Translations under genes and position numbers: made by a program | In this document: piece by piece, positions 1 through 34,902 of the stretch | Position numbering within the stretch: the first letter of the stretch is position 1 | Layout of the letters: each line of letters starts with the position of its first letter | Source: Saccharolobus islandicus REY15A | Lineage (GTDB): Archaea > Thermoproteota > Thermoprotei_A > Sulfolobales > Sulfolobaceae | Length of the DNA stretch: 64,000 nucleotides | NCBI RefSeq assembly: GCF_000189555.1 | Contig: NC_017276.1 | Direction: 5' to 3' (one strand) | Notes under the pieces: model-generated | Told to the model about the DNA's origin: nothing | What the model saw: only the letters and a program-made list of their open reading frames with translations | Databases searched by the model: none

Positions 1-723
1 GTAGGCCCAACTGGTAGCGGAAAGACCACTGCATTAAACTCACTATTAATGCTACTTAATCCATTAGCGAAATATTTAACGATTGAGGATACACCGGAGC
101 TAAAATTACCTCACAAATATTGGATACAATTCTATACTAGACCTTCAAACTATGAAGGGAGTAAGGATATCAGTTATTATGAACTAGTCAGACTCTCCTT
201 AAGATATAGACCAGATTACATTATAGTAGGGGAAGTAAGAGGGAAAGAAATAGAATGGCTAGTTCAAGCTGTTGCCAGTGGTCATGGTGGGCTCACAACA
301 TTTCATGGGTCTAATCACGTTGACTTAATAACTAGAATTAGTGGGTTATTGGGTCAAGATCTATCGTTACAATTTAAACAGCTAATTTCAGTGATTGCAA
401 TCATAAAGAGAATTGAAACCGAGAATAGAAAGATGAATAGGAAAATAATATCTATTGTTGAAAATGATGGAAACGGATTTAGGGAAGTATTTAAATATGA
501 TTATGAAAGGAAGAGCTTCCTTCCCAATAATTCAAAAGAAATTGGTAGCATACAGCTGGAAAAAGCTAGAGAATTATTAGGCTGGAGTAAGGATAAGTTG
601 TATAAGGAGATAGAAAATAGGCTATTATTAATAAGGGGGCTTGCTGAAAGGGGAGTTTACGACTACGACGCATTGGCAAAAGAGTTAGTTAAATATTATA
701 TAAATGGTGATAGGGGTGACTGA
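1..723 (+). CDS. Type II/IV secretion (VirB11/TadA-like) pilus-assembly ATPase, 5'-truncated by the window edge; possibly the BasE (bindosome assembly) orthologue
   Basis: Frame open from base 1 reads VGPTGSGKTT (Walker A), then LTIEDTPEL (Asp box) and YIIVGEVRG (Walker B), plus a GHGGLTTFH His box; overlaps the downstream TadC-like gene. Confidence 0.9.
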   Translation, partial: VGPTGSGKTTALNSLLMLLNPLAKYLTIEDTPELKLPHKYWIQFYTRPSNYEGSKDISYYELVRLSLRYRPDYIIVGEVRGKEIEWLVQAVASGHGGLTTFHGSNHVDLITRISGLLGQDLSLQFKQLISVIAIIKRIETENRKMNRKIISIVENDGNGFREVFKYDYERKSFLPNNSKEIGSIQLEKARELLGWSKDKLYKEIENRLLLIRGLAERGVYDYDALAKELVKYYINGDRGD

Positions 724-2692
724 AAGAAGAATTAAATTGGCTAGCATAATCTCATATGATTTCTTGTTTCTAGTTTTACTATCGGGTTTACTAGATTTAA
801 TCATTACGTTATTTAGAGAACGAATTCTATACGTAATTTCTAGTTTCTTTCAATATATAGTAATCAACCCTTCAGTAGCTCTTGGAGACGCATTAGGTTT
901 TCTATTTGTCCTTCAAGCATCGCTTTTAGGTCTATTTATTGGTGGTATAGTTATTTTAAGTATAAGTTTTACAATAAATTTAACGCGGATAAGGAGTGAA
1001 TATGAAGAGGGTGTTCCTTTATCAACTATTCTGAAGTCTAGGATAATTACAAGCAGTAGATTAGGTTTCATAGCAAATTGGATAAGCGAGCGTACTAAGA
1101 GGTATATTAACGCAAGTGCTGACTTAGAAAGTCCTACTGAAGTCGGTGTTAGATACGTCGCATATTTTTTGATCTCATTACTTCTCGTAATACCGATATC
1201 ACTAGCACTAAGTATAATATTACTGTCTCCACTACCATTTCTATTATTACTTTTTCCGTTCATTTTTGTCTTTTATCCAGAACAGAAATACAAAAGTAGG
1301 GCTAGGGAAGTAAGAGACAGCATCCAAGATGAGATCCCTTTCTTTGTGACCTTAATTACTATCATTAACGCCAGCGGTACGACTATATATGAGGGAATGA
1401 GAAAAATTGTGCAGTTTCCATTATTTAAAGCTATGAAAAAGGAAGCATTGCTCATTATAAGAGATATAGATTTCTTCGGAAAATCTCCACTTGACGCTTT
1501 AGAGCATAGAGCTCGATTAACGTTTAATAGAGATTACTCTTGGTTTTTGGCAGGTTATACTTCGATTATAAGGAGTGGTGGCGATATTGAAGCATACCTT
1601 TTTCAAAAGGCTAGAGAATTTCTTAATTGGCTCCAGTTTCGTTGGAGGTTTTACTCAGAAAGAACCTCATTCCTAGGAGAATTAATAGTAATCCTATTCC
1701 TCATTTTCCCCATGTTCTTAATTGTATTAGCGTTCTTCACAAATGGTGCAGTTATATCGTTCTTGCTTGTAATACCAATATTATTTGGTACAATATTATA
1801 CACAATTACAGCTAGCAATAGACCTAGATATATGGATAATATAGGTCTTAACAAGATAAAGCTGTTAATGGCCTTTCTTGCTGCACTTCTAATAGCGGGA
1901 ACAGTTGAAATATTTCTTAATGAAATATATTACGCAATTGGTTTAGGACTATTGGTGTTCTCTATAACCTCAACAATATTCATGTACAACCAAATAAGAG
2001 AAATTAATGACGTAGAGAACTCACTACCGCAATTTCTGAGAGATATTACAGAGTTCAGAAAGATAGGTTACGATCTAAGTAGGGCTATTAAAACATTGGC
2101 TGGGGAAAAGAAATATAGAAGGGAGTTTAATAGGGTTCTAGACGAGATAGTAAAACAAGATTCCATGGGGATTCCAATAACTAGAGCTAAAATAAACACT
2201 AGAAGCTGGTTAGGCAAGTTCTCTCTTACCACTGTTCAGATATTGATAGAGGGCGGTGCAGTAAGACCAGATCTATTAGAATATCTAACTGAATTTACAC
2301 TTAACTTTATACAATCCAAGAGAGAAGCATTCTCAAGGATGAGAGCCTATCAAGTTTTAGGAATTCTGACACCTATCCTCTTAATTGCCACTATACTTAT
2401 AGCGATTGTAATCATTAGCTCATTCACAGTAGTAACTTTACCGGCAAGCACCTTGGGTGTACCTCAATTCCCAAACATAATTGCCCAATTTATTTTATCT
2501 TCGTTTATCCTAGCTGAAATGTTCATATTCATTTTAATGTCGACCTTCGCCATAGGATTACTGATAGCTAAAGCACTATATGGTACTGTACAATACATGA
2601 TAATGCCGTTAATTGGGTTAGTCCTCGCATTACTCTCAATACACTTCTTTAGCGTATTAGAACCAATAATCTTGAGATTCTTCTCGATATAA
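704..2692 (+). CDS. TadC/GspF-family pilus platform membrane protein with two T2SSF domains; possibly BasF
   Basis: 662 aa polytopic protein with two repeats of the 'E(I/L)P.F...' T2SSF motif (DEIPFFV, NSLPQFL); directly follows the secretion ATPase. Confidence 0.85.
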   Translation: MVIGVTERRIKLASIISYDFLFLVLLSGLLDLIITLFRERILYVISSFFQYIVINPSVALGDALGFLFVLQASLLGLFIGGIVILSISFTINLTRIRSEYEEGVPLSTILKSRIITSSRLGFIANWISERTKRYINASADLESPTEVGVRYVAYFLISLLLVIPISLALSIILLSPLPFLLLLFPFIFVFYPEQKYKSRAREVRDSIQDEIPFFVTLITIINASGTTIYEGMRKIVQFPLFKAMKKEALLIIRDIDFFGKSPLDALEHRARLTFNRDYSWFLAGYTSIIRSGGDIEAYLFQKAREFLNWLQFRWRFYSERTSFLGELIVILFLIFPMFLIVLAFFTNGAVISFLLVIPILFGTILYTITASNRPRYMDNIGLNKIKLLMAFLAALLIAGTVEIFLNEIYYAIGLGLLVFSITSTIFMYNQIREINDVENSLPQFLRDITEFRKIGYDLSRAIKTLAGEKKYRREFNRVLDEIVKQDSMGIPITRAKINTRSWLGKFSLTTVQILIEGGAVRPDLLEYLTEFTLNFIQSKREAFSRMRAYQVLGILTPILLIATILIAIVIISSFTVVTLPASTLGVPQFPNIIAQFILSSFILAEMFIFILMSTFAIGLLIAKALYGTVQYMIMPLIGLVLALLSIHFFSVLEPIILRFFSI

Positions 2693-2725
2693 ACGTTTAT
2701 ATTTTCTCTTTCCGTAATTTTATTA

Positions 2726-4246
2726 ATGCAAGATAGTTTAGGATTACTTGCAATAACTCTAGCGGTTATACTACTATTTTCCATTTTAGCTGGTGTAATA
2801 ATATTAAACCATGATGATATTACCCAATTCTATAATGTTCAAGGTAATATAAATACCGAAAAGCTAAGTAAGGCTAAAGTAGGTTATTATTGGGTTGTAG
2901 AAGAGTTAAAAAACATAACAATTTCCTTCATACCTCATGTATATATACTAGATACTGAGGGGATATACAATATTCAAAGCATTTTAGAAACCACATTTAA
3001 CGGACAGACTTACACATTCCCAGTCAAAAACTTGATGATCTTTACCAATGGTTCATTAACTAGATATGGAGTAGTTTTGAGTCCGGGAGATGCAATAGTA
3101 ATTGGACCAAATATCACTAGTGGGCAAATAAGTTTTGTAAGCAATACGGGAAACTCTTTCTCATTAACCCTATTTCCACCCTCAGTTAAAACGCTTTTAC
3201 CAAATGAATATAACCAGAATTATACCGTCGTTACCATAGGAAATGAGAGTGTACTATCCATAAAGACAATAAATGAGAAGTTAATAGGGCTTAAAAACAT
3301 TACGAGTGATGAATTAATCTTTGACTCAACACCTCCGTTATACAATGAAACGTTCCCTCCAGTAAAATCTCCAATACCATATGATTCTTACAAGGTTGAT
3401 ATTACTTATTTTGAAAATGTAACCCCAGTAAAGGTTATTGATGCCAAGAATAATGAAACATATCTCATTTACTTAGGTTATGGCTACTGGATTGGTGAGG
3501 TCTATGGAAATATAGATGAAGGATCTGTACATATTGGGTCTTTCAATATCTCCTACAATACTACATACTTCTATTATACTTATGGTTCAGTAAACTTCCT
3601 TAGTAATTACAAAATTAATATCCACGAAGTCAGTAACGGATATGTCCCACTATGCATGATATTATACACTTACAATGTTACCAATCAAAGTTCTGGATAT
3701 AGTAGAATAGGAAACTATAGTCAATTATGGATTAAGCCGAAAGCAAACGTTAATATAGCTTATACTGGCACTAGTAATATTTACTACTACTATTACGATT
3801 TTATGATAAACTACGCTAATAATAATAGTTTAAACTCCATCCTTATCGGAGGTTCTACTACATACTTAGGCTATTTGCCAATAAACATAACAATAAACGT
3901 CATGGATAACCACAATTTAAACAATACAATCTCCTCTTTTAGGATAGCCTACAACAATTCACAACAATTAACTAGCTTGCCAACAATTATGAACGTTACA
4001 TACAACGTTACCTCATATTCCCCTCCATTTGTACTCAATTTTTCCTTGACTAATGTATCCCTTTCAATAATGTTTAATGGTACGGCTAACTTACCAAACT
4101 ATACCTTCTATAGTTACAATCTACCTATTGTAATTCCAACAAACGAAAGTATATTGAATATTAATGGCTATACTTCGCCAATGATCATTCCATTCTTTAT
4201 TATCATAGTTAATGGGAAAATAGTCGGAGAAAATTTACCTACTTAA
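2726..4246 (+). CDS. Membrane-anchored or secreted Y/N/T-rich surface protein, possible pilus-associated adhesin
   Basis: 506 aa; N-terminal hydrophobic helix, many N-x-S/T sequons, beta-rich composition; 33 bp after the TadC-like gene. Confidence 0.7.
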   Translation: MQDSLGLLAITLAVILLFSILAGVIILNHDDITQFYNVQGNINTEKLSKAKVGYYWVVEELKNITISFIPHVYILDTEGIYNIQSILETTFNGQTYTFPVKNLMIFTNGSLTRYGVVLSPGDAIVIGPNITSGQISFVSNTGNSFSLTLFPPSVKTLLPNEYNQNYTVVTIGNESVLSIKTINEKLIGLKNITSDELIFDSTPPLYNETFPPVKSPIPYDSYKVDITYFENVTPVKVIDAKNNETYLIYLGYGYWIGEVYGNIDEGSVHIGSFNISYNTTYFYYTYGSVNFLSNYKINIHEVSNGYVPLCMILYTYNVTNQSSGYSRIGNYSQLWIKPKANVNIAYTGTSNIYYYYYDFMINYANNNSLNSILIGGSTTYLGYLPINITINVMDNHNLNNTISSFRIAYNNSQQLTSLPTIMNVTYNVTSYSPPFVLNFSLTNVSLSIMFNGTANLPNYTFYSYNLPIVIPTNESILNINGYTSPMIIPFFIIIVNGKIVGENLPT

Positions 4247-4990
4247 TAAATTTATATAGTATAGGATCATTGAGGTAATTATTGCTACATCATAAGCTAT
4301 AGTATTAAAAAAGAGAATTAAGATACATACCGCTAGGACGGAGTAGACATATCTCCAAAGATCCTTTGAAATCATGATACCAAATGCCGAAAAGCCCAGT
4401 GAGAATATGAGAGCTGAATAAAACCAATCTTGGTAATCAGATGCAGTTGGTGGAAAAGCAGCTACTCCAATTAATGGGAAAACCTCTCTATACGTTAACC
4501 CCCTTAAATAATGCAATAAATATAAAGCCAGCATCTCAGCCATCATGGGATAGAAAAACCAGTAGCTATTTATCGAGTAGTAGAAGGCATAGTATAGTGT
4601 TGAAAACTTAGATGGACCAAACTGAGCAATACCGAAAGTAGATCCCATTAATATTTCATTCAATACTAATAGAAGTGAGAAAATGGCAATATGGATTCTT
4701 TCTCTATTAAACTTTGTATTTGAGAATTTGCTTATATTTAATAAAAAATAAATAATTAGGGGTATCATTGTGAAAGTGTTTATACCAAATGCTATTGCCA
4801 ACGATAAGGTTGATGGAGAGATTAAATAAACTGATGCCCCAATGAACATAGTTATCATCATTACGAGGGAAAAGTAAATGAAGAAGACTCCAACGTAAGT
4901 TCTTATCTTCTCTGTATAGTAAAGGATTAAGACTATGATAATAACCATAATCGAAGCTATGAACGATAAAACTATTAGTTCATCTGACAC
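4235..4990 (-). CDS. Hypothetical polytopic membrane protein
   Basis: 251 aa ORF with several hydrophobic segments; GTG start; upstream TTTTTATT TATA-like box on the minus strand. Confidence 0.75.
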   Translation of the reverse strand: MSDELIVLSFIASIMVIIIVLILYYTEKIRTYVGVFFIYFSLVMMITMFIGASVYLISPSTLSLAIAFGINTFTMIPLIIYFLLNISKFSNTKFNRERIHIAIFSLLLVLNEILMGSTFGIAQFGPSKFSTLYYAFYYSINSYWFFYPMMAEMLALYLLHYLRGLTYREVFPLIGVAAFPPTASDYQDWFYSALIFSLGFSAFGIMISKDLWRYVYSVLAVCILILFFNTIAYDVAIITSMILYYINLLSR

Positions 4991-5025
4991 ATGCGACTTA
5001 TTTTATATTAAAAATAAAAAATTAT

Positions 5026-5033
5026 GTGCAACT
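5026..5033. repeat. Left copy of 8-bp target-site duplication GTGCAACT
   Basis: Identical octamer at 11673-11680; each copy abuts an inverted 9-bp terminus. Confidence 0.85.
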
Positions 5034-5042
5034 GAGTGTGGA

Positions 5043-5811
5043 GATAGTGTCGTCGTTAAGCTATTTATATTTGTATAACGAGTATTACTTATGGGTAGGA
5101 AGGCTGTAGTTAGGCAAGACGTTTCTTGTCCCTCTTGTGGTAGTCATCATGTTGTTAAGTGTGGTTGGGTAGGCAGTGTGTAGGGATTGCGGTAGATACT
5201 TCTTGGGTGATGCTACTTACCATCATCATTCCAAGAAGTTGAGGGAGGAGGCTTTGAGGTTGTATGCTAATGGTATGAGTATGAGAGCCATTTCTAGGGT
5301 TTTGAATGTCCCCTTGGGTACTGTGTTCACTTGGATTAAGCGGTATGGTGGGCAGAAGTTGAGTTGTGGGGTAAGGCTAAGGAGCTGGTCAAGGGTGGTG
5401 TTGTTGCTAAGGTTGTTGATGAGATGTGGACTTACTTGTACAAGAATACTAGGGCTTTTTACAACTGGGTTTTCACTTGCTACGTTTACACGAAGCTGGG
5501 AGTTTATCTCATTTACTCTGTGGGGGATAGGGATGAGAGTACTTTCCTTGAGGTCAAAAAGTATTTGCTTGACGAGGGTAGATGGGTGAGCGATGATTAT
5601 AACTTGTACTTCTGGTTGAAAGACCACACGGTTGTCTCGCCAGTTAACCCGAACGAGTCCTTTCATTCCTCATTAAGGGATAGGCTAATTAGATTCAAGA
5701 GAGCAACGAAGGCAGTAAATAGGAGCATTAGTACCATGATGTACTCCATAGCCCTAGTCTTATGGGAGAGAAGGTTAATCCCAGAATTTGTAGCTTAATG
5801 ACGACACTATG
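5043..5811 (+). mobile_element. IS1-family element (ISC796-like), degenerate
   Basis: ~21-bp inverted repeats GATAGTGTCGTCGTTAAGCTA (5043-5063) and TAGCTTAATGACGACACTATG (5791-5811) enclosing a transposase reading frame. Confidence 0.85.
5091..5798 (+). pseudogene. IS1-family transposase, frameshifted
   Basis: ATG 5091 MGRKAVVRQDVSCPSCGSHH (Zn ribbon) stops early; CRDC and the HTH continue in a second frame; the DDE domain (VDEMW, SDDY, NESFHSSLR) is in a third frame. Confidence 0.85.
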
Positions 5812-5868
5812 GACACACTCCATGTTCACTAAGCTAACTTTTTAACGAGAATTAGGTAATGTTAAGTT

Positions 5869-6171
5869 ATGATAAGTTTCACACAAATTAACGGATACCC
5901 GATAATGATTTATGAAAAGGACGGTAAGAAATATTATTAGTTGGCTGGATGTCCTCATAAGAAAAGACCTTTAAATGAAGGAAAGGTATTTGACGATAAG
6001 ATAATGTGCCCCTTCCATAAGGCTGTATTTAGCCTAATTACTGGAGAATTAATTAAAGAACCAGAATCTAAAACTCCTTGTATTAATTGCAGATTAATAA
6101 AGGCAGATATAATAGGAGATAAAATAGTTTTTGAAGAAGAACCATTCATACCACAATTACCATCAAAATAA
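5869..6171 (+). pseudogene. Small Rieske [2Fe-2S] ferredoxin interrupted by an in-frame TAG (5938-5940)
   Basis: ATG 5869 MISFTQINGYPIMIYEKDGKKYY*LAGCPH...IMCPFH...F; both Rieske motifs (CxH, CxxH) lie downstream of the stop. Confidence 0.7.
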
Positions 6172-6381
6172 CTTTTTAACTCTAACTAATATAATCTTAG
6201 CTGTATTACTAATTACTTTTTAACTTAAATATATTAATAATTTTCATTAAATTCTAATCATCTATAAGTAAATTATATTTTATCATTACATAAATAGCAC
6301 TGTATTAAAAATTAATATAATATTAATAAATTGTTTAAATTTCTAATGTAATTTAAGTTTATCACTAGCCTTTATGAGAAT

Positions 6382-7023
6382 TCATTTATATATTGTTGGA
6401 TCCCTTATTTTAGCTTGTTTAAAAGCCTCAATCCTCTTTAAGCATTGACTACATTTACCACAGTGATATTTATGACCTAACAAGCACGAATAAGTAATGG
6501 ATGGATCTAATCCGCTTTTTATACCTATTTTTAGAAGTAGATATTTAGGAAAATTAACAAAAGGAGTTTCAAATCTAACACCTAATATCTCACCTAATTC
6601 CTTAAGCTTTTCCATTATATCCCTTCTATTGGGCTCGTACTCACAGTCCTCCTTTATCGTAGCCATGATAACTCTTTCGTAACCATTTTGCTTAGCGTAA
6701 GCAATAGCTATGGGAACTATTACTAAATTCCTATGAATTATGGGTTCATGTGGTCTTAACCAATCATTATTTACAAAAGCCTCACCAAGGTTTTTAGCAT
6801 TAATAATTATCAGCCTTCTTTTTAACTTCTCACATATAATTTTACCATATTTCAGCTGCATCCTAGCTGAGGATTGTCCGTAATTTATGAAAAGACAGTC
6901 GAAATCCAGACCTTTTTTAGCATAATAATATGCAACTGAAGATGAGTCCAAACCAGATGAGAAAAGTAATAAAAATTTCATAATATCTATTTCCAGTAAT
7001 TTCTTAGCCTTATTTATCTTCAT
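6382..7023 (-). CDS. queC: Stand-alone QueC-like (7-cyano-7-deazaguanine synthase family) PP-loop ATPase
   Basis: SSGLDS PP-loop, INYGQ, HRNLVI, and C-terminal SC...CGKCSQC Zn site; alternative start at 6981. Confidence 0.8.
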   Translation of the reverse strand: MKINKAKKLLEIDIMKFLLLFSSGLDSSSVAYYYAKKGLDFDCLFINYGQSSARMQLKYGKIICEKLKRRLIIINAKNLGEAFVNNDWLRPHEPIIHRNLVIVPIAIAYAKQNGYERVIMATIKEDCEYEPNRRDIMEKLKELGEILGVRFETPFVNFPKYLLLKIGIKSGLDPSITYSCLLGHKYHCGKCSQCLKRIEAFKQAKIRDPTIYK

Positions 7024-7108
7024 TACTAATTGAAATGCTTCAACTAGAGGCTATTAAATATGTACAAGGTTATAAAGAGCTTAAATTAAGTCTAATAACT
7101 TTACGGAA

Positions 7109-7270
7109 ATGCTAACGAATATAAGTGTAATAATTGATGGAGAGGTTTTAGGAATATATGTATCAAAAGAATACCTCGTAATAAGTAAGGAGAGGATGAG
7201 AAGATACAAGAACAATAAGAAGGGCTAGAAGAAATACTTAAACTAAAGCCTTGCGTATTAGTATTTTATA
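7109..7270 (+). pseudogene. IS110-family transposase N-terminal fragment (ISC1190-like, from recall)
   Basis: Reads EVLGIYVSKEYLVISKERMRRYKNNKKG, then after a frameshift EEILKLKPC; matches my recollection of Sulfolobus IS110 N-termini with the catalytic GID mutated to GIY. Confidence 0.5.
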
Positions 7271-7741
7271 AAAATATTAATATTTATACAAATTAAGTAA
7301 GTGAGCCTATAAAAGCATAATCAGTTATACTACGGATAAATTCCCTAAATAATTTATAGCTTAATATTAACGTTTTTATATATATAAAAGCAAAATTAGA
7401 GTTAAAATAATTTATTCAACTAATTAAGAAAGTATGGCTTACCTTTTACCTTTGTGTCGTATTTATAAATAAATTATATTATAAATATTAATTGAAAATT
7501 GAAATTAGAATCTAGCTAACTTAATGAAGGCATAATAACTGCATATGATCTAATAAAATAAACATGCTTCGTGGAATTATTTAATTTTTCTCAATAGAAA
7601 TGTATAACTAACTTATAATCCAGATTAGCTTAGAATTTATTCCAATTCATCTAGCTTAAGAACTAAGAAAGGTAAACTAATTCATAAATTAAAATAAACA
7701 AAAACTTAAATTCTTTAAATTCTCTTCTAGATATCTTCAAA

Positions 7742-9157
7742 TTATAATGTATAATTTATATAATAATAGTAAAATGGTATATAGTATTTCTCTCCACCAA
7801 TACAATAAGGTACACTAGCGTTCATCAAATATATGTAATAAGTATACGAGGAAAGATCAGTTATCGAGATTGTCGATGCAAAGTAAGAATAAGAATTTGT
7901 AAATGCAACAATCCCCACATAAGGTGAGACTACTGCCAAAAGTGATGACAACCATGAAGGAATACTCTCACTCAACGATTCAGCAATCTTAATAATTAAG
8001 CCAATAGGAACACTATAAGTACCGTAACCATTAGAAGTATAAATCGAAACTGAAGTATATGAATTAGTAAGTGTAGTAGGATTCACACTAAATAGGAATG
8101 TTAAGTTCTTTGAGAAATACTCACTAGGGGGAACGTTAGGAATTGTTGTATTATATAATGCTGGTAAATAACTTGATCCAGAACTAACAACTTCTAACCC
8201 AGTTAAAAATGCCTCATCACAATAACCGTAAAATTGTGGGGGAGCACGAGGTGTAGATAAACAATAGAAATACACACTATAATTTGCAACAGCAATCTGA
8301 CCCATAGTATAAATTTCCAAAAAATTAGTATTTGTACTTTTACCATAATTTCCTTTTTCACATATTACTAGATTACTAGCGCTTGTGGTTATTGAGAAGC
8401 CTGAAATGGTTACTGGGTATCCTAGTACTAAAACTCCGAATTTGAATTGTATTCCAGATGCTTGTGAATGGCCTTCCTTAAGTAATAAACTACCTACGTA
8501 ATCTTTGTAGTTTGTATCAGTTACGTAGGTTATTGATAGTGGTATTATTCCTAGGCTTTTGTTTGATGGGTAGAACCACACTTTGTTTAGGTAGAATATT
8601 AGGTTTCCTTTTGCTTGTTCTTGAGGTACTGTTGTTGTAGTAGTGGGGTCTTTTCTTTTTATTATAATTTTCCTTGGTTTAATGAATAGTTTTGCTACTG
8701 TTTTTCCTATCCCGTGTGTTATGTTGTATTGTGAGATTGTTATTGTGAATGGTTGTATGTATGCTATTGTCTCGTTTTGCTCGTTTATTGTATATGATGC
8801 GAATCCTAGTAGTGATGGGGAGATATTATAGCCATAGTGCTTTATCCAATGCTTTACTATTGTGGTTAAGCTGCTCAAGGGTATTTTCACGTAGCTAGTA
8901 TCATTTGCAACTAGTATTCTCCTAATTACGGTACCATTTGCTGTTGGGTAAAATGCGAAAATGCTTACGGAAACGTTTTGTAATAATGTTAATTTGTTGG
9001 GGGAGTATTTGAAGAATACCACATTTATATCCTTAGGATTAGTATACTTAACGTAGAGCATGTAGAAAGTATTGTAATTGTTGATTATAATTGTTAATAT
9101 TATGATGATAATTAATATCAAAGCAGAAACCATAACAATTTTAGTTCTCCTACTCAT
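7742..9157 (-). CDS. Membrane-anchored extracellular protein of unknown function
   Basis: 471 aa; basic N-terminus plus Ile-rich TM, Thr linker (DPTTTTTVP), Y/S/T-rich body with sequons. Confidence 0.75.
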   Translation of the reverse strand: MSRRTKIVMVSALILIIIIILTIIINNYNTFYMLYVKYTNPKDINVVFFKYSPNKLTLLQNVSVSIFAFYPTANGTVIRRILVANDTSYVKIPLSSLTTIVKHWIKHYGYNISPSLLGFASYTINEQNETIAYIQPFTITISQYNITHGIGKTVAKLFIKPRKIIIKRKDPTTTTTVPQEQAKGNLIFYLNKVWFYPSNKSLGIIPLSITYVTDTNYKDYVGSLLLKEGHSQASGIQFKFGVLVLGYPVTISGFSITTSASNLVICEKGNYGKSTNTNFLEIYTMGQIAVANYSVYFYCLSTPRAPPQFYGYCDEAFLTGLEVVSSGSSYLPALYNTTIPNVPPSEYFSKNLTFLFSVNPTTLTNSYTSVSIYTSNGYGTYSVPIGLIIKIAESLSESIPSWLSSLLAVVSPYVGIVAFTNSYSYFASTISITDLSSYTYYIYLMNASVPYCIGGEKYYIPFYYYYINYTL

Positions 9158-9304
9158 TTTCTCTAAACGATTAGTTAAAAGGATAACTATTAAACTTTTC
9201 TAGTAAATAACTAGAATGTAAATAAGGATATATATTTTATTGAAAATTTAATTTATCTTCTCTACGATTATAACTATTCCGTAAGCTATTATCTCGCCCA
9301 TACT

Positions 9305-9514
9305 GAGTGTGAACAACGATTTCGTTCATTTGAAATTTGGTTAAAATTTCCTTAAAGTCGTATCATTTAAACTCTCTGATTTACAATAAAACTCTTGAAC
9401 ATGGTTAAAATTACAAAATTATATTTTATTAACTAACAAATCTTGTGGTGAATTGAAAATAAATTTATACTTTATACAATTTATACTGAATTAACAAAAT
9501 TGTTATCCACATTC
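9305..9514. mobile_element. 210-bp MITE-like non-autonomous element with IS6-type ends
   Basis: Left 31 bp match the IS6 end at 10829 at 25/31 positions; right 24 bp match the IS6 end at 11649-11672 at 22/24; interior is AT-rich and non-coding. Confidence 0.7.
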
Positions 9515-9705
9515 CCTTTGGAAGAGATAAATTTTTAATAAAAGATCTAAAAATAATCATTTCATATAATATATAGATAAATTATGAGTAAACACTTAAA
9601 GAACAAGTCAAAAGCAGCTTATTCTTACTAGTAATATTTTATGTTTAGTATTATCAAGTATAGAAGAAAGGTTAAGGAAAAAAGCTATAATCAGGAGTAA
9701 AATCC

Positions 9706-10077
9706 TTAACTATTAACGGCAAATATAACTAGTTTCTTAACATCTTCCTTAAGTTTTTTAACTTCCTTCTCGTTTAAACTAAGCTCATGGAATCCTTCCA
9801 CATGAAGAGTCCATGCGCTTTTCCATAGAATTGGTATTTCAGGATTATTACTTCGTAATAATTTGGAAGCTTTAAACAAGTTTTCGCTTTCCCATCTTCC
9901 CTTGCTCTCAACATCATTTATTATTTCTTTTAGGTTATTTTCTATAACAAGAAGCTTTATAGCCTCCTCAGCAGCCTTATAGTACTTCTCACAAGCCTGA
10001 ACAAGATCACCCTTAGATAAAAACTCCTCCGCATCATTTAAGAACTTTAATGCTAAATCTTTGCTTGGCCTCCTCAA
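9706..10077 (-). CDS. PaREP1-family protein (copy 2)
   Basis: AEEFLSKGDLVQACEKYYKAAEEAIK signature, plus W..A..LH..GFHE. Confidence 0.85.
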   Translation of the reverse strand: MRRPSKDLALKFLNDAEEFLSKGDLVQACEKYYKAAEEAIKLLVIENNLKEIINDVESKGRWESENLFKASKLLRSNNPEIPILWKSAWTLHVEGFHELSLNEKEVKKLKEDVKKLVIFAVNS

Positions 10078-10372
10078 TTAGCGTCTTAATGTCTTTCTTA
10101 TAATTCTCTATTAAATCTTTATCCATAAATTTTCTTGCAGTAAAAAGTGTTACCGCTGATGCCCACATGTCTATTATATTATCTCCAAGCTTATAAGACA
10201 GTTCAGTTACCGCATCATTTAATGTCTTAGAATCCCACCCGTGCTCTTCTGCCTCATTTATTATTTCTTTTAGGTTATTTTCTATAACAAGAAGCTTTAT
10301 AGCCTCCTCAGCAGCCTTATAGTACTTCTCACAAGCCTGAACAAGATCACCCTTAGATAAAAACTCCTCCGC
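9914..10372. repeat. 119-bp identical direct repeat (9914-10032 and 10254-10372) shared by the two PaREP1 genes
   Basis: Base-by-base identity by eye; 340-bp offset. Confidence 0.9.
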
Positions 10373-10411
10373 TTCCTCGTAATATATCTCTGCACTAGTA
10401 CTTATACTCAT
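10034..10411 (-). CDS. PaREP1-family protein (copy 1)
   Basis: Same signature; probable start MSISTSAEIYYEEAEEFL at 10411 (the longer tracked ORF runs into the tnpA remnant). Confidence 0.85.
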   Translation of the reverse strand: MSISTSAEIYYEEAEEFLSKGDLVQACEKYYKAAEEAIKLLVIENNLKEIINEAEEHGWDSKTLNDAVTELSYKLGDNIIDMWASAVTLFTARKFMDKDLIENYKKDIKTLIEEAKQRFSIKVLK

Positions 10412-10454
10412 TACAATAAACATTATAAAACACACTTTTAACTCTTTCTGATAA

Positions 10455-10783
10455 AGAATGACAAGCCTCACCCGGACGAGGTTTGTGTATTTTCTTAACT
10501 CTGGGAATTTCTTCAAGACTAGTCTGGCTCATTTTCCCTTGAAGTAGTTTGCTAGATATGATGGTGAGTATCTGGGTGGGCAGTTTACGAAGAGGTGTAT
10601 GTGGACTGGCATTACTTCTAGGGTTATTATTTCACAATCTAATTCTTCTGAAATTGATTTCAAGATCTCTTTAATATATTCGGCCACTTCACCGACTAAC
10701 ATGTCTCTACGATGTTTTGGAATCCATACAAAATGATAGTTATATAGGTATTTCGCATGCCTTGTTGATTTGTATTCTACAAT
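10455..10783 (-). pseudogene. tnpA: IS200/IS605-family Y1 transposase (tnpA) remnant with subterminal hairpin
   Basis: VEYKSTRHAKYLYNYHFVWIPKHR...PVHIHLFV...YFKGK* (HUH motif; TGA at 10529-10531); the catalytic-Tyr region is missing; hairpin ACAAGCCTC-N8-GAGGTTTGT at 10461-10486. Confidence 0.8.
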
Positions 10784-10828
10784 ACTTTAAAGTATTCAGA
10801 GATTTAAAAGCTTAAGGAAAACTCTGGA

Positions 10829-11672
10829 GAGTATGGCCAACATTTTCATTCATTTGAAACATTTACATTTATTATCACCTCCTTATCTAACAAGTACGTT
10901 GGGGTGTAAAGGATGTTGTATATCAAGAAGAATGTTGATAACCACCTCACTATTGTTAACTTGTTGGAATTCCAAGGAAAGTGGAAGTCCATTGATGCAA
11001 GCCTATGTTTTAAACTTCTGAACCCTTGTTCTGCATAATCCCTCTCGTTGAATATTACCTTCTCATGTTCTACGTTTAGCCATGAGAAGGCGTTGTAAGC
11101 TGTTGCTTCATCGTGCAAGTAAATTACCTTATCCATCCTTACTTTGAATACTCTCCTTGCTATCTCTTCAGCCCTCTTCATACTTACTAGGACCACCAAG
11201 ACGTGTACTCCACTCCTAACGCTGGTAATCATGAAGAAAGGTATTCCCTTGGTTTTGACATCCCTAACAATCCACACGTAATAATACTGACCCTTGATTA
11301 GCCTTACCTTAGCCTCGTCAATCGCGTAAACCCCGCTCAATGGTACAGCGTACTTAACATAACTCAACCTCCTATGGTAGTAAAGCAGAGTGGGGCAAAA
11401 CGACCCTCCATGAGGATAATCCAGAAACGTAGTTAGCCAAGGCAGAGGCTACGGTCTCCCTAGAGTAAAACCTCGGGCTAAGGTTAATATACTCCATTAA
11501 TATTAGTATTACTTGGGTGAGCACGGGAACCTTCCATCTAGTTCCCGTAATCTCACCCTAAATAATACCTCCCGTGCTAACCCTAAAAAGGTATTATCAT
11601 CAACGTTCTATTAATAAAGCACAAACAATTCAAATAATTCATTTTAGATTAACAAAATTGTTGTCCACACTC
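10829..11672 (-). mobile_element. IS6-family insertion sequence, 844 bp, inactivated
   Basis: Imperfect terminal IRs GAGTATGGCCAACATTTT and GAGTGTGGACAACAATTTT (reverse complement of the right end) enclose a DDE transposase. Confidence 0.8.
10846..11548 (-). pseudogene. IS6-family DDE transposase, frameshifted, apparent start codon mutated to ACG
   Basis: AIDE...LHDE...AEQGFRSLK triad in 10846-11367; the N-terminal part (RWKVPVLTQV...LPHS) is in another frame. Confidence 0.75.
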
Positions 11673-11680
11673 GTGCAACT
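11673..11680. repeat. Right copy of 8-bp target-site duplication GTGCAACT
   Basis: Identical to 5026-5033. Confidence 0.85.
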
Positions 11681-11683
11681 TAC

Positions 11684-11699
11684 GGAAAACCTTTTATAC
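11684..11699 (+). promoter_or_regulatory. BRE/TATA (GGAAAA-CC-TTTTATAC) for the gene at 11720
   Basis: Canonical spacing about 25 bp upstream of the ATG, consistent with a leaderless transcript. Confidence 0.6.
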
Positions 11700-11719
11700 A
11701 ATGTTCCTTCATTTATAGT

Positions 11720-12112
11720 ATGAATCCTTTTAAAAAAGAAAAAACATATCCTAAACAAGTTGATTTAAATAAGGTAGTTAATGAGTTTGTATCTTACCTA
11801 AATAGCGATAAATGGAAAGTACAACAAAAAGTAGAGGGAAATAAGGCAATAGTTCAAGCACAGAAAGGTGGAATATTAAGAGATATAATCGCTGCAGATA
11901 GAGCTTTAACGTTTACTTTTGAGAATACACCTCAAGGTCTTAAGGTAACTGCAGGAGTAGGCAGTTGGATAAAGAATTTGGCAATAACTGCGGTAGAAAC
12001 ACTTTTACTATCTGAATTATTCCTAATAGTTGACGTACCAGAAATGTTATGGAACAAACATGTTGAATCAGAGCTTATGAAAAAACTAGATGAAATAGTA
12101 CAAAGATCATAA
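11720..12112 (+). CDS. Conserved hypothetical protein
   Basis: 130 aa ORF with a promoter; converges on the aminopeptidase. Confidence 0.75.
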   Translation: MNPFKKEKTYPKQVDLNKVVNEFVSYLNSDKWKVQQKVEGNKAIVQAQKGGILRDIIAADRALTFTFENTPQGLKVTAGVGSWIKNLAITAVETLLLSELFLIVDVPEMLWNKHVESELMKKLDEIVQRS

Positions 12113-29982: not shown

Positions 29983-30489
29983 ATGGATATTAAGGAACAC
30001 GCCGAGGAAGTGTGGTTTATAATTATGTTGATCTTGGTTGCAACATTCTTCAGTTGGAACGTTTACTATATTCTAACTGGAAAGAGCTTCAGTTTAAGAT
30101 ATGGTTTACCAGAATTCTCTGGCTTACCTCCACAAGGACAAGAGGCAGTAAAGTATTTTGAAACTCACCCTCCACCTCCCGGGGAGTATTCTGAGGTCAT
30201 AAATGGTACACTAGTAGTTAATATTACTGCAGTACAATACAAGTGGATTCCCAACGTTATAGTAGCTAACGTGAGTGAACCAGTAGTACTGATAGTAAAC
30301 TCTCCACAAGCGGATACTGGATTCTACTTAAGGCTCCCAAATGGGCTAATTAATATAAATGATGTTCCAGGGATTACAAGCTATGTTTATTTTATAACTC
30401 CTAATCAGCCGGGAAATTATACGTGGTATAATGCAGAATATGATGGTTATGCTTCTTCATATATGACTGGAACTCTGGAGGTGATATAA
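29983..30489 (+). CDS. soxA: Quinol oxidase subunit II (SoxA), no CuA ligands
   Basis: 168 aa; one TM plus cupredoxin fold without CxxxC; first gene of the oxidase operon. Confidence 0.85.
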   Translation: MDIKEHAEEVWFIIMLILVATFFSWNVYYILTGKSFSLRYGLPEFSGLPPQGQEAVKYFETHPPPPGEYSEVINGTLVVNITAVQYKWIPNVIVANVSEPVVLIVNSPQADTGFYLRLPNGLININDVPGITSYVYFITPNQPGNYTWYNAEYDGYASSYMTGTLEVI

Positions 30490-32018
30490 TGAGTATTATA
30501 AAACAAATAAAAGATACTATAATGCCTAAAAACACGTTAAACGTAGTGTGGCTTTACACAATAGGTTCCATATTCTGGCTAGGAGTTTTAGGAATTGCAG
30601 CCATGAATCTAAGGACTTATTTAACGTTTAATAGTAATTCCCCCAACGTGGGAGAACTATACTATAGTGCATTAACTATTCACGGCTGGGCCGGTATGTT
30701 TGGATTTGTACCTTTAGCTGCGGTAGCTGTAATCGCGTTTGCAATGTATAAGAGTAACTTATCAATTGTACACACTAAGTTAATGTCTATTTTCTTCTGG
30801 TTGTCTAACATATTCTTAGCAATTGGGTTTGCTGGATCTCCTGATATGGGTTGGTACATGTACCCTCCACTAGCAATAGAATCGGATAGTAACTTCCACG
30901 CCTTTCTGTTTTATACTTCACCAGCCTTGATGGGTATGGCTTACTTATCCCTAACTTTAGCCTTCATATTACAGACAGCGATGTTCATAACGCTGATTGC
31001 AGATGCATACGCTACAAAACCAAGAAATGAAAGACTGAACATATTTGGAGCTTATGGAGTAGCTTTTGCAATAGTTATTGCAATAACTCTTCCCGCATTA
31101 GCAGCATCTACATTATGGTATACGTTATATTTCTTTGCAGGAGTTCCAGTTAACCCATTGTTATGGGCATTGCTATTTTGGTTCTATGGACATCCCGTAG
31201 TATATTACGTTCCATTCCCGTTGTTTGGCGCTTTATACTACTATGTACCAAAATACGCTGGAAGGGCACTCTTCAGTGAGAAATGGGCTAGATGGAATAT
31301 ATACTTACTATCAATAGGCTCAATGCTTATATGGGTTCACCATCTGCAAACTTGGCCATTACCTATAGATCTGAGAATATGGGTAAACTTATCCACACTG
31401 ATTTTAGCCTCAGGGTCTGGTCTTACCGTGCTGAACTTAGGGTTAACAATACTTCTTTCTCAAAAATATAACTGGAAAGACCCAGTAGGAATGGGAGCAC
31501 TGATTGCATTAGTAGGATTCATATTAGCTGGTGTTCAAGCATTAGTTTTGCCAGAGAATTCGATAAATCCACTATTCCACAATACCTATTACGTAGTAGG
31601 GCATTTCCACCTAATGATATGGACATTAATAGTAATGGGCTTCACTACAGCATTTTTAGATATGTTAAGAAGCACATTTGGTGGATTCAATTTCAGTGAA
31701 CAAGCTTCTAAGTGGATGAGAATTGGAATGATATGGTGGACTGCGCCATTTTTGGGTGTAGGTTATACCATGTCAGTTATTGGCTATCTAGGAATGTTAA
31801 GGAGAATGATAGCTTATCCAGCAATGTTCCAACCATATAACTTGCTAGAGTCGTTCCTAGCTGAAATAGGAATTCCAGGGTTATTAGTAACGATATTTGT
31901 AGGTATTTTCGATGCGTTAGCTTATGCTTCTAAGCAAAATGTTTTTTCCACTTCTACCCCCTCAACTCCCTCTAATTTACCCGTAATGGCGGAAGATGGG
32001 GTGAGTAAAAATGGGTGA
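30489..32018 (+). CDS. soxB: Heme-copper oxidase subunit I (SoxB)
   Basis: IHGW, GHPVVY, VHH and GHFH ligands. Confidence 0.92.
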   Translation: MSIIKQIKDTIMPKNTLNVVWLYTIGSIFWLGVLGIAAMNLRTYLTFNSNSPNVGELYYSALTIHGWAGMFGFVPLAAVAVIAFAMYKSNLSIVHTKLMSIFFWLSNIFLAIGFAGSPDMGWYMYPPLAIESDSNFHAFLFYTSPALMGMAYLSLTLAFILQTAMFITLIADAYATKPRNERLNIFGAYGVAFAIVIAITLPALAASTLWYTLYFFAGVPVNPLLWALLFWFYGHPVVYYVPFPLFGALYYYVPKYAGRALFSEKWARWNIYLLSIGSMLIWVHHLQTWPLPIDLRIWVNLSTLILASGSGLTVLNLGLTILLSQKYNWKDPVGMGALIALVGFILAGVQALVLPENSINPLFHNTYYVVGHFHLMIWTLIVMGFTTAFLDMLRSTFGGFNFSEQASKWMRIGMIWWTAPFLGVGYTMSVIGYLGMLRRMIAYPAMFQPYNLLESFLAEIGIPGLLVTIFVGIFDALAYASKQNVFSTSTPSTPSNLPVMAEDGVSKNG

Positions 32019-33684: not shown

Positions 33685-33696
33685 GGGTGAGTGAGA

Positions 33697-33819
33697 ATGA
33701 ATAAGCTAGGTATAGCAATTTTGGCTCTAATATTTGGAGCCACCGCATTCATGGCTGGGTTTATGGCGTATAACTTGTTATGGGACTCTGTTAAAATTAT
33801 AGCGATATTGGTGGGATAA
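33697..33819 (+). CDS. soxD: SoxD-like 40-aa single-TM subunit (below the ORF-track cutoff)
   Basis: MNKLGIAILALIFGATAFMAGFMAYNLLWDSVKIIAILVG; GGGGTGA RBS upstream; position after soxC. Confidence 0.7.
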   Translation: MNKLGIAILALIFGATAFMAGFMAYNLLWDSVKIIAILVG

Positions 33820-33820
33820 A

Positions 33821-34015
33821 ATGAAAAGCTACACTATAGCTGGAATTATATCGGGAATAATGACTATATTTTTTATAATACTCTCCTTACCTCTTAACTT
33901 CATTTCGGCACGTAGTATAGGAGTTGATCCAACAAGTATAATAATGGCAACAGTATACATGCTCTTAGCGAGCATAATATTCATAATACTCTTTAAGGGA
34001 ATAAACAAGCTATGA
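33821..34015 (+). CDS. Small two-TM protein (SoxD'-like) ending the sox operon
   Basis: 64 aa; 1 bp after soxD; followed by a T-tract. Confidence 0.65.
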   Translation: MKSYTIAGIISGIMTIFFIILSLPLNFISARSIGVDPTSIIMATVYMLLASIIFIILFKGINKL

Positions 34016-34026
34016 AGATCTATAAG

Positions 34027-34047
34027 CTTTTTTTAAATTATTTTTTA
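34027..34047 (+). terminator. Poly-T terminator after the sox operon
   Basis: T7 followed by a further T-rich run just after the stop. Confidence 0.5.
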
Positions 34048-34890: not shown

Positions 34891-34902
34891 AGGAAAAATC
34901 TT

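What the first reader, a model, noticed from the sequence alone, without database searches (positions are those of the whole stretch)
6382..7023. Stand-alone QueC-like enzyme carried as mobile cargo
Seen: intact 213-aa QueC fold (SSGLDS, YGQ, RN, CGKCSQC) amid otherwise decayed IS debris. It has no GAT domain, the usual YPDC segment is replaced by EDCEYEPNR, and no queD/queE/folE/tgt/dpdA gene lies nearby. Established: Sulfolobales archaeosine synthesis is associated with a GAT-QueC fusion, and QueC-like proteins also act in 7-deazaguanine DNA modification and anti-phage systems (QatC, type IV CBASS). Inference: this is probably not the housekeeping copy and may be a mobile antiviral or nucleotide-modifying enzyme. 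Staying intact while its neighbours decayed suggests selection.
Basis: partly seen in the sequence, partly recalled or inferred. Interest (0 to 1): 0.72.

Follow-up and report, generated by a model that had tools for sequence, protein, structure and literature searches.

The report
Relocated QueC-like enzyme gene in Saccharolobus
This is an intact, conserved second QueC-type enzyme gene in Saccharolobus islandicus; in other Sulfolobaceae its relatives sit inside the lipoate and sulfur-oxidation gene cluster, so it probably has a new, non-queuosine job, and nothing here supports an antiviral role.

Summary
The ORF is real (6382-7023, minus strand, 213 aa; possibly 199 aa from M15). It has a QueC fold with a P-loop and a four-Cys zinc motif.

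It is not the housekeeping enzyme. It scores 77.9 bits against TIGR00364 (cutoff 150.3). It has lost several residues of the canonical signature. The same genome (S. islandicus REY15A) also encodes a 464-aa GAT-QueC.

It belongs to a very small Sulfolobaceae-only clade. In all 14 loci examined outside Saccharolobus, the gene lies inside the sHdr/LbpA lipoate-assembly sulfur-oxidation cluster, in the order u117 | QueC-like | HAD-like | LbpA. In Saccharolobus that slot is empty.

Here the gene sits on a ~5 kb segment bounded by IS ends. This segment is ~96% identical between S. islandicus and S. caldissimus. A syntenic core locus of two other Saccharolobus lineages, used as proxies, is only ~74% identical. 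That points to recent lateral transfer.

The CDS is better conserved than its flanks (p=4e-6; dN/dS ~0.25).

No CD-NTase, TGT, Qat or que genes are nearby, and no neighbour matches a PADLOC defence model.

Best reading: an ATP-dependent carboxylate-activating enzyme tied to the LbpA/lipoamide sulfur relay, substrate unknown. The "antiviral" claim is not.

The parts
6382..7023 (-). QueC-like PP-loop ATPase gene (213 aa; alternative start M15 at 6981 gives 199 aa). P-loop SSGLDS, YGQxS, WLRPHEPIIHRN, EDCEYE, PF(x)4K, C180/C188/C191/C194 zinc motif.
7024..7741 (-). 718-bp AT-rich upstream intergenic region. The 6001-8000 composition bin that spans it is 27% GC. It holds TATA-like sequences upstream of both candidate starts, has no Rfam match, and is 96% identical to S. 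caldissimus.
5821..10828 (.). ~5 kb block shared at ~96% DNA identity with S. caldissimus JCM 32116. Contents: Rieske remnant, QueC-like gene, 471-aa ORF, two PaREP1 genes and an IS200/605 TnpA fragment. The contexts outside the block differ between the two genomes.
7742..9157 (-). 471-aa ORF of unknown function with a hydrophobic N-terminal stretch and no Pfam or PADLOC hit. It is co-transferred with the QueC-like gene (97.5% identical to S. caldissimus).
9706..10516 (-). Two tandem PaREP1 (HEPN-like) genes (9706-10077 and 10034-10516) sharing a 122-nt, 99% direct repeat.
10529..10702 (-). 57-aa fragment of an IS200/IS605 Y1 transposase (89% DNA identity to the ISSis2 tnpA on an S. islandicus plasmid).
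5869..6171 (+). Small Rieske ferredoxin gene inactivated by a nonsense codon at 5938-5940. It is intact (100 aa) in S. caldissimus.
5034..5820 (.). 787-bp IS with 30-bp terminal inverted repeats (5034-5063 and 5791-5820). Its HTH_23 transposase is split into two overlapping ORFs. It forms the left boundary of the shared block.
10829..11524 (-). IS remnant with an IS-end-like sequence at 10829-10859 and decayed DDE transposase ORFs. It forms the right boundary of the shared block.

Best explanation
The gene encodes an intact, selectively maintained, divergent member of the QueC (PF06508) PP-loop ATPase family. It is not the cell's preQ0/archaeosine enzyme; that role most likely falls to the 464-aa GAT-QueC encoded elsewhere in the same genome.

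It belongs to a very small clade found only in Sulfolobaceae. The conserved, presumably ancestral, position of that clade is inside the sHdr/LbpA sulfur-oxidation and lipoate-assembly cluster. There it lies between a conserved 117-aa protein (the SSO1107 family) and a HAD-like gene followed by the lipoate-binding protein gene LbpA.

In Saccharolobus that slot is empty. The gene survives instead on a ~5 kb segment bounded by IS ends, and that segment has recently been exchanged between S. islandicus and S. caldissimus.

Shown: the fold, the retained ATP-binding P-loop, the RN motif, the conserved Lys and the four-Cys zinc site, the family's distribution, its gene context, and its sequence conservation.

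Inferred mechanism: like QueC and Cap9, it uses ATP to adenylate a carboxyl group, and a nitrogen (or sulfur) nucleophile then captures the activated group. The substrate is probably not 7-carboxy-7-deazaguanine. It is more likely a component of the LbpA/lipoamide/TusA sulfur relay, acting in trans on the sHdr-LbpA system that all Sulfolobaceae are reported to carry.
For: Fold and motifs.

Not canonical QueC:
- TIGR00364 score is 77.9 against a cutoff of 150.3. S. solfataricus GAT-QueC scores 162.7.
- hhalign against canonical QueC shows H39->Ser, E42->Gln, P-D-C -> E-x-N, and Cys-Tyr -> Cys-Leu. Y189 is reported as essential in PMC13329287.

Second QueC in the same genome.

Tight clade:
- The exhaustive HMMER search gave four representatives at 200-340 bits, then a gap to 147 bits.
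- Only 21 clusters were found at 90% identity, all from Sulfolobaceae or unnamed metagenome contigs.

Context:
- 14 of 14 loci outside Saccharolobus place the gene in the LplA / radical-SAM x2 / TusA / MarR / u117 | QueC-like | HAD-like | LbpA cluster.
- The link survives three rearrangements (L011, L012, L013).
- A more divergent member lies beside CoA_binding_2-TrmB and an E3-like Pyr_redox_2 gene.

Empty slot in Saccharolobus.

Lateral transfer:
- The block is 96% identical against a 74% baseline.
- u117 is 78% identical at the protein level, whereas the QueC-like protein is 98.6% identical.
- IS ends lie at both boundaries.

Selection:
- 6/642 substitutions in the CDS against 46/927 in the flanks (p=4.4e-6), with omega 0.25.
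- Only 3 of 62 family-conserved columns are changed in this copy.
- 15 sequence variants in its 90%-identity cluster, drawn from several S. islandicus strains, S. caldissimus and unnamed assemblies, are at least 97% identical.
Against: - No experiment or published expression data for this gene were found.
- The functional link to LbpA/lipoate rests only on gene neighbourhood. The gene is transcribed divergently or convergently with respect to both neighbours, so it is not in an operon with them.
- The family is patchy. The sHdr system is reported in all Sulfolobaceae (PMC11323534), and u117 occurs in many species where this family was not detected. It is therefore at most an accessory factor.
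- In this window the gene is 100% detached from that cluster.
- Three of the four residues shown to be essential in E. coli QueC are retained (Y35, R99, Y131), so residual deazaguanine chemistry is not excluded.
- The P-loop has Ser in place of the first Gly.
- The baseline for the lateral-transfer argument uses proxy genomes (a metagenome contig carrying a u117 protein identical to that of S. caldissimus, and Saccharolobus sp. E5-1-F), not REY15A itself.
Confidence: 0.6

Rival explanations
1. It is an archaeal antiviral QueC-family enzyme that works like Cap9 or QatC. On this view it ligates a 7-deazaguanine carboxylate to the N-terminus of a partner protein, and it is carried on a mobile defence islet together with the PaREP1 (HEPN-like) genes.
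For: - The best Foldseek match is Cap9 (9nto_B, E=4.6e-10), and the PDB sequence search gives Cap9 at 1.2e-5.
- It shares Cap9's Y-x-Q-(x)5 spacing, the PF(x)4K motif and the ~190-aa minimal size.
- In Saccharolobus it lies on a laterally transferred, IS-bounded block next to PaREP1 genes.
Against: - No CD-NTase, Cap10/TGT-like, QatA, QatB or QatD genes lie nearby.
- No neighbour hits PADLOC.
- The QatC model matches only 29 C-terminal residues (18 bits against a 280-bit cutoff).
- Cap9's H(x)4YxDC motif and its Glu are not conserved.
- QueC matches almost as well as Cap9.
- All orthologues outside Saccharolobus lie in a metabolic cluster.
- The family is absent from plasmid, phage and viral-contig collections.
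Confidence: 0.08
2. It is a genuine, redundant preQ0 synthase (true QueC activity) that supplements GAT-QueC.
For: - Sources annotate it as 7-cyano-7-deazaguanine synthase.
- It retains the P-loop, YGQ, RN, a Tyr aligned with the Tyr of YPDC, the conserved Lys and the four-Cys zinc site.
Against: - Its TIGR00364 score is about half the cutoff.
- His39, Glu42, Pro-Asp-Cys and the essential Tyr after the first zinc Cys are all replaced.
- It is never adjacent to queD or queE.
- Its distribution is patchy, although archaeosine occurs in virtually all archaeal tRNA (PMC5485725).
- Most Sulfolobaceae manage with GAT-QueC alone.
Confidence: 0.1
3. In Saccharolobus the gene is a functionless relic that has hitch-hiked on a mobile segment and has not yet decayed.
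For: - It is detached from its ancestral cluster.
- The P-loop carries a Gly->Ser change.
- The neighbouring Rieske gene and transposases are broken.
- Stop-loss and truncated variants occur in a few assemblies.
Against: - The CDS diverges about five times less than its flanks (p=4e-6), and omega is 0.25.
- Only 3 of 62 conserved columns have changed, which is within the family's range.
- It is intact in several S. islandicus strains and in S. caldissimus.
- Two other family members also lack the first P-loop Gly.
Confidence: 0.1
4. The adjacency to LbpA/lipoate genes is inherited synteny with no functional meaning. On this view the enzyme acts on an unrelated small molecule.
For: - The gene is monocistronic and oriented against both neighbours.
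- It is missing from many genomes that carry the cluster.
- It functions, or at least persists, away from the cluster in Saccharolobus.
Against: - The association survives several independent rearrangements of the cluster (L011, L012, L013).
- A distant member (P0022) is again next to an E3-like oxidoreductase and the CoA_binding_2-TrmB pair of the same cluster.
Confidence: 0.12

Closest known systems
Canonical QueC (7-cyano-7-deazaguanine synthase; TIGR00364; PDB 3BL5, 2PG3)
   Same: The PP-loop Rossmann fold is shared (Foldseek TM 0.71-0.77). So are the P-loop, YGQ, RN, a Tyr aligned with the Tyr of YPDC, the conserved Lys, the four-Cys zinc motif and the ~200-aa size.
   Different: His39->Ser, Glu42->Gln, P-D-C -> E-x-N, and the Tyr after the first zinc Cys -> Leu. 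It has a new invariant WLxPHEP lid loop and an EDC motif. Its score is half the TIGR00364 cutoff. It is never next to queD or queE and is not universal in its lineage.
GAT-QueC (crenarchaeal archaeosine-pathway fusion; the S. solfataricus protein AAK40383.1 is an example)
   Same: It contains the same QueC-family domain, occurs in the same organisms and carries the same source annotation.
   Different: GAT-QueC has an N-terminal class-II glutamine amidotransferase domain, passes the TIGR00364 cutoff and was found widely across named Sulfolobaceae genomes. The window protein has no GAT domain, is patchy in distribution, and is a paralogue present in addition to GAT-QueC.
Cap9 (type IV CBASS QueC-like protein deazaguanylase; PDB 9NTO)
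   Same: It is the best structural match. Both share a minimal ~190-aa architecture, the Q-(x)5 spacing after YxQ, the PF(x)4K motif and a Cys-rich zinc motif.
   Different: No CD-NTase or Cap10 partner is present. Cap9's Glu and its H(x)4YxDC motif are not conserved. The context here is archaeal and metabolic, not a defence operon.
QatC (QatABCD defence)
   Same: Both have a QueC-family core and a C-terminal Cys motif.
   Different: QatC is ~400 aa with N- and C-terminal extensions and its own set of motifs, and it is encoded with qatA, qatB and qatD. None of these features apply here (NF041925 scores 18 bits against a 280-bit cutoff).
PP-loop sulfur-transfer enzymes (LarE, TtuA)
   Same: They share the PP-loop fold, adenylate a carboxyl or carbonyl group, and appear in the Foldseek list (TtuA ~5e-7, LarE ~2e-5). 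This gene's orthologues lie in a sulfur-relay neighbourhood (TusA, DsrE).
   Different: The window protein keeps the QueC-type four-Cys zinc motif rather than the three-Cys [4Fe-4S] site. Similarity to these enzymes is much weaker than to QueC or Cap9.

Membership tests
Canonical QueC (TIGR00364 / PF06508 SSN cluster 1) | SGGxDS phosphate-binding loop | tested here: met
   The motif is SSGLDS in the window and in S. caldissimus, and SGGLDS or SGGMDS in most other members. The first Gly is also replaced in P0022 and P0023.
Canonical QueC (TIGR00364 / PF06508 SSN cluster 1) | C(x)8CxxCxxC zinc motif | tested here: met
   C180-(x)7-C188-xx-C191-xx-C194 is invariant in the family. The spacing is one residue shorter than in canonical QueC.
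Canonical QueC (TIGR00364 / PF06508 SSN cluster 1) | YxQxHxxE, VPxRN, YPDC and the Tyr after the first zinc Cys (catalytic signature from PMC13329287) | tested here: not met
   hhalign gives YGQxS...Q (His->Ser, Glu->Gln), PIxHRN (only RN kept), Y-E-x-N (only Tyr kept) and SC-L (Tyr lost).
Canonical QueC (TIGR00364 / PF06508 SSN cluster 1) | Score above NCBIfam's curated cutoff | tested here: not met
   77.9 bits against 150.3. GAT-QueC of S. solfataricus scores 162.7.
Canonical QueC (TIGR00364 / PF06508 SSN cluster 1) | Genomic linkage to queD/queE | tested here: not met
   None was found in the window or in 14 orthologous loci.
Canonical QueC (TIGR00364 / PF06508 SSN cluster 1) | Converts CDG to preQ0 | not testable with these tools
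   This needs an enzyme assay or E. coli delta-queC complementation.
GAT-QueC | N-terminal class-II glutamine amidotransferase domain fused to QueC | tested here: not met
   The protein is 213 aa with only PF06508. Genuine GAT-QueC proteins are 460-464 aa and carry PF13522/PF13537.
Cap9 (type IV CBASS) | Encoded next to a CD-NTase (and Cap10) | tested here: not met
   Neither gene is in the window or in orthologous loci.
Cap9 (type IV CBASS) | Motifs Y/FxQ(x)5E, RN, H(x)4YxDCxxxF and PF(x)4K | tested here: inconclusive
   YGQ(x)5Q (Gln in place of Glu), RN and PF(x)4K are present. H(x)4YxDC is absent.
QatC (QatABCD) | ~400-aa protein with extensions, the QatC motifs and qatA/B/D neighbours | tested here: not met
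   NF041925 scores 18.3 bits against 280, and PADLOC QatC scores 14.9 bits, both over the C-terminal 29 residues only. No Qat neighbours are present.
Sulfolobaceae LbpA-cluster QueC-like clade (defined here) | Family motifs WLxPHEPIxHRN, EDCEYE, TYSCLLGHxxHCGxCSQCxxR and DPTxY | tested here: met
   All are present. Only 3 of 62 columns conserved at 90% or more differ in the window protein. The profile score gap separates the clade from all other QueC-like proteins.
Sulfolobaceae LbpA-cluster QueC-like clade (defined here) | Position between u117 and HAD-like/LbpA in the sHdr lipoate-assembly cluster | tested here: not met
   No cluster gene lies within the window. The slot is empty in Saccharolobus. 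This is a lineage-specific relocation.

The most novel reading that the evidence does not exclude
The clade is a previously unrecognised functional branch of the QueC superfamily. On this reading it carries out an ATP-dependent amide-forming or thiocarboxylate-forming modification of a cofactor or protein of the archaeal sHdr-LbpA (lipoamide/TusA) sulfur-oxidation system. That would extend QueC-fold chemistry from deazapurines and anti-phage protein tagging into dissimilatory sulfur metabolism.
Probability: 0.3. Interest if true: 0.75.

Novelty: new variant of a known kind. Interest (0 to 1): 0.55.

Why it matters
The QueC fold has recently been shown to be reused for protein deazaguanylation (Cap9, QatC) and for other chemistries. 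The 2026 survey of PF06508 left the small archaeal clusters unexamined.

This clade links a QueC-like enzyme to the lipoate-binding-protein and sHdr sulfur-oxidation cluster. The sHdr/LbpA papers I searched do not mention such a gene.

The copy studied here is in S. islandicus REY15A, the standard genetic model for Sulfolobales. Knockout, complementation and biochemical tests are therefore straightforward.

It is also a clean example of a gene leaving a conserved metabolic cluster and then moving between species on a segment bounded by IS ends.

Tried and rejected
- Searched the window for remnants of the ancestral neighbours (u117, HAD-like, LbpA, MarR, YHS) by tblastx and tblastn down to E=10. 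None was found, apart from an unrelated TusA at 53253-53474.
- Searched the Saccharolobus sHdr-LbpA loci for a QueC-like remnant. None was found.
- Modelled u117 (pLDDT 95.4) and searched the PDB. There was no significant match, so it gave no functional clue. The UniRef 'Cmr5-like' name is not supported.
- Tried to read the gene contexts of the nearest outgroup (the ~205-aa KDDxxxYxSxS proteins). P0026 is not on record.
- NCBIfam and PADLOC gave only generic QueC hits for that outgroup.
- Rfam scan of 4500-12000 found nothing.
- The bacterial-type promoter and terminator scan was uninformative for an archaeon.
- Literature searches for ExsB, the annotated enzyme name with 'islandicus', SSO1107, and QueC together with LbpA/sHdr found nothing relevant to this gene.
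- Compared the 471-aa neighbour with the 506-aa ORF at 2726-4246. They are unrelated.

Full report
**Observation.** The ORF at 6382-7023 (minus strand, 213 aa) is present as described.
- It matches Pfam QueC PF06508 over nearly its whole length (E=1.2e-24, 87 bits).
- An AlphaFold2 model built on 22 homologues has mean pLDDT 84.9. Its best PDB matches are Cap9 (9nto_B, E=4.6e-10) and B. subtilis QueC (3bl5, E=2.8e-9, TM 0.71/0.77).
- The quoted motifs are all there, and there is no GAT domain.
- All orthologues outside Saccharolobus begin at the equivalent of Met15, and residues 1-13 are modelled with pLDDT below 50. The functional protein may therefore be 199 aa (6382-6981). One S. islandicus annotation uses that start.

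**Source.** The exact protein is encoded on CP002425.1, the 2,522,992-bp chromosome of Saccharolobus islandicus REY15A. The gene order around it is that of the window.

**Not canonical QueC.**
- The protein scores 77.9 bits against the QueC equivalog TIGR00364, whose cutoff is 150.3. The S. solfataricus GAT-QueC scores 162.7.
- A profile-profile alignment to canonical QueC sequences can be read against the experimentally defined signature of PMC13329287.
- Kept: the P-loop, Tyr35, Arg-Asn, a Tyr aligned with the Tyr of YPDC, the conserved Lys and the four zinc cysteines.
- Replaced: His39->Ser, Glu42->Gln, Pro-Asp-Cys -> Glu-x-Asn, and the essential Tyr after the first zinc Cys -> Leu.
- New invariant features of the family are a WLxPHEP loop before HRN and an EDC motif.

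**A second QueC exists.** A profile of GAT-QueC sequences retrieved 460-464-aa GAT-QueC proteins from Sulfolobaceae.
- One is from S. islandicus REY15A (ADX86037.1, on a contig of the same 2,522,992-bp length as the one carrying the window gene).
- Others come from the genomes of Sulfurisphaera javensis and Stygiolobus caldivivus, which also carry the stand-alone gene (matching contig lengths), and from Ca. Aramenus sulfurataquae.
- PMC5485725 describes GAT-QueC as the crenarchaeal archaeosine-pathway enzyme.
- The stand-alone gene is therefore an extra paralogue.

**Family extent.**
- The word-indexed search found only 21 clusters at 90% identity. All are from Sulfolobaceae or from unnamed metagenome contigs.
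- The exhaustive HMMER search of 1.84 billion representatives gave four family representatives (340, 242, 215 and 201 bits). There was then a gap to 147 bits, followed by a continuum of other QueC-like proteins.
- A scan of GTDB species genomes found 12 loci from 11 genomes: Metallosphaera yellowstonensis, M. javensis, Ca. Acidianus copahuensis, Ca. Aramenus, a Stygiolobus sp., and several unnamed isolates or MAGs.

**Conserved context.** In all 14 loci outside Saccharolobus, the gene lies in the cluster that encodes lipoate-protein ligase, two radical-SAM lipoyl synthase-type proteins, DUF8155, a deacetylase-family protein, TusA, a YHS-like protein, MarR/TrmB regulators and the lipoate-binding protein LbpA. 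DsrE, TusA and Hdr genes are seen further upstream in one locus (L003).
- The immediate order is u117(-) | QueC-like(+) | HAD-like(-) | LbpA(+).
- u117 is adjacent in 13 of the 14 loci, and the HAD-like gene plus LbpA are adjacent in 10.
- The link persists where the cluster has been rearranged (L011, L012, L013).
- A more divergent member (P0022) lies beside the CoA_binding_2-TrmB pair and an E3-like Pyr_redox_2 gene of the same system.
- u117 (SSO1107 in S. solfataricus) occurs in many more species than the QueC-like gene. The QueC-like gene is therefore an accessory of this cluster, not a core part.

**Saccharolobus.** None of the cluster genes is in the window.
- In the sHdr-LbpA loci examined (contigs whose u117 protein is identical to that of S. 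caldissimus, and Saccharolobus sp. E5-1-F and E11-6), the HAD-like gene and u117 are directly adjacent. No QueC-like remnant lies between them.
- The Saccharolobus protein is 67% identical to that of Sulfurisphaera javensis. This falls within the 50-80% range of the cluster proteins between the same genera.
- It branches as its own lineage within the clade.
- This fits vertical descent followed by relocation.

**Mobility.** Window 5821-10828 aligns with S. caldissimus JCM 32116 at ~96% DNA identity, and the sequence outside this block does not align.
- Identities within the block are: QueC-like CDS 99.1%, upstream intergenic 96.0%, downstream intergenic 91.9%, and the 471-aa ORF 97.5%.
- By contrast, the syntenic sHdr-LbpA locus is 74% identical over 15 kb between the S. 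caldissimus-type contig and Saccharolobus sp. E5-1-F. u117 is 78% identical at the protein level.
- The left boundary of the block is a 787-bp IS with 30-bp inverted ends (5034-5820). The right boundary starts with an IS-end-like sequence (10829-10859). A related IS sits at a different place in S. caldissimus.
- I infer recent lateral exchange of the block. The caveat is that the baseline comes from proxy genomes.
- No member of the clade was found on plasmids, phages or viral contigs. Only generic QueC proteins at 30% identity or less appear there.

**Selection.**
- The CDS has 6 substitutions in 642 sites, against 46 in 927 flanking sites (Fisher p=4.4e-6). There are 3 synonymous and 3 non-synonymous changes, giving omega 0.25.
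- Only 3 of 62 family-conserved columns are changed in this copy, which is within the range of other members.
- Fifteen variants in its 90%-identity cluster, from several S. islandicus strains, S. caldissimus and unnamed assemblies, are at least 97% identical. One is a truncated form and two are stop-loss forms.
- The adjacent Rieske gene carries a nonsense codon in REY15A but is intact in S. caldissimus.

**Defence hypothesis.**
- PADLOC gives only a generic QueC hit (71 bits) and a 29-residue QatC tail match.
- None of the block's other proteins hits PADLOC.
- No CD-NTase, TGT-like, Qat, DpdA or que genes were found by Pfam in the ORFs scanned.
- The resemblance to Cap9 is real but no stronger than the resemblance to QueC.

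**Mechanism (inferred).** The retained P-loop, RN, Lys and zinc site argue for the family's common chemistry: ATP-dependent adenylation of a carboxyl group, then capture by a nucleophile. The loss of part of the deazaguanine signature, together with the conserved neighbourhood, argues for a different substrate connected with LbpA, lipoamide or the sulfur relay. Which substrate it is, and whether the product is an amide or a thiocarboxylate, is unknown.

**Literature.** None of the sHdr/LbpA papers I could search mentions a QueC-like, ExsB or PP-loop gene. The 2026 PF06508 survey did not analyse the small archaeal clusters.

Noticed in passing
window 5869-6171 (+): The small Rieske ferredoxin gene has a nonsense codon at 5938-5940 (Trp in S. 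caldissimus). The 100-aa gene is intact in S. caldissimus JCM 32116. The 76-aa TTG ORF that remains still holds both Cys/His motifs.
   Followed up: yes
window 5034-5820; 9305-9335; 10829-10859: A 787-bp IS has 30-bp terminal inverted repeats and a split HTH_23 transposase. An 80%-identical copy with an intact 244-aa ORF is inserted in S. caldissimus at the position equivalent to window ~9306-9313. At that position the window has only a 31-nt IS-end-like sequence, and a similar sequence begins the IS remnant at 10829.
   Followed up: partly
window 9706-10702 (-): Two tandem PaREP1 (HEPN-like) genes share a 122-nt, 99% direct repeat (9914-10035 and 10254-10375). An IS200/605 TnpA fragment lies upstream. 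In S. caldissimus the fragment and a PaREP1 domain are annotated as one 222-aa ORF.
   Followed up: partly
L001 9607-9963 and orthologues (SSO1107 family): A 116-121-aa all-helical protein ('u117') occurs in many Sulfolobaceae and lies in the sHdr-LbpA cluster in every locus examined. It is highly conserved (66-72% mean column identity). It has no Pfam domain, a confident AF2 model (pLDDT 95) and no significant PDB match. Some UniRef entries call it Cmr5-like, which the fold search does not support.
   Followed up: partly
L001 10598-11077 and orthologues: A ~160-aa HAD-like protein (weak Pfam hits, E=5e-5) lies between the QueC-like gene and LbpA. Its N-terminal motif reads WLDGV, so the first (nucleophile) Asp of the HAD DxD motif appears to be missing.
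   Followed up: no
proteins P0025-P0035, P0042-P0072: The nearest outgroup is a set of ~205-aa QueC-like proteins with the motifs PHxPxPHRN and [KR]DDxxxYxSxS. They also fall below the TIGR00364 cutoff (105-113 bits). Their context and function are unknown.
   Followed up: partly
proteins P0309, P0311, P0314: A few S. islandicus-type assemblies carry a stop-loss variant (226 aa, read-through to ...WILIKASDKLKLH) or a truncated 146-aa variant of the QueC-like protein.
   Followed up: no
window 6001-8000: GC content falls to 27% here, against ~35% for the rest of the window. The gene is flanked by 718 bp and 210 bp of AT-rich DNA with no ORFs.
   Followed up: partly
window 40941-43127; 49451-49858; 53253-53474: The window also holds a rubrerythrin / CCG-domain (HdrD-like) / DUF3501 gene trio, a rhodanese and a stand-alone TusA. 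These are unrelated to the sHdr cluster proper.
   Followed up: no
window 49-4246; 30489-37891: Other content of the window: a type IV pilus-like assembly ATPase and membrane protein (T2SSE/T2SSF) followed by a 506-aa ORF with no Pfam match; terminal oxidase subunit I and cytochrome b; and a TRASH-domain regulator next to a heavy-metal (HMA-domain) P-type ATPase.
   Followed up: no
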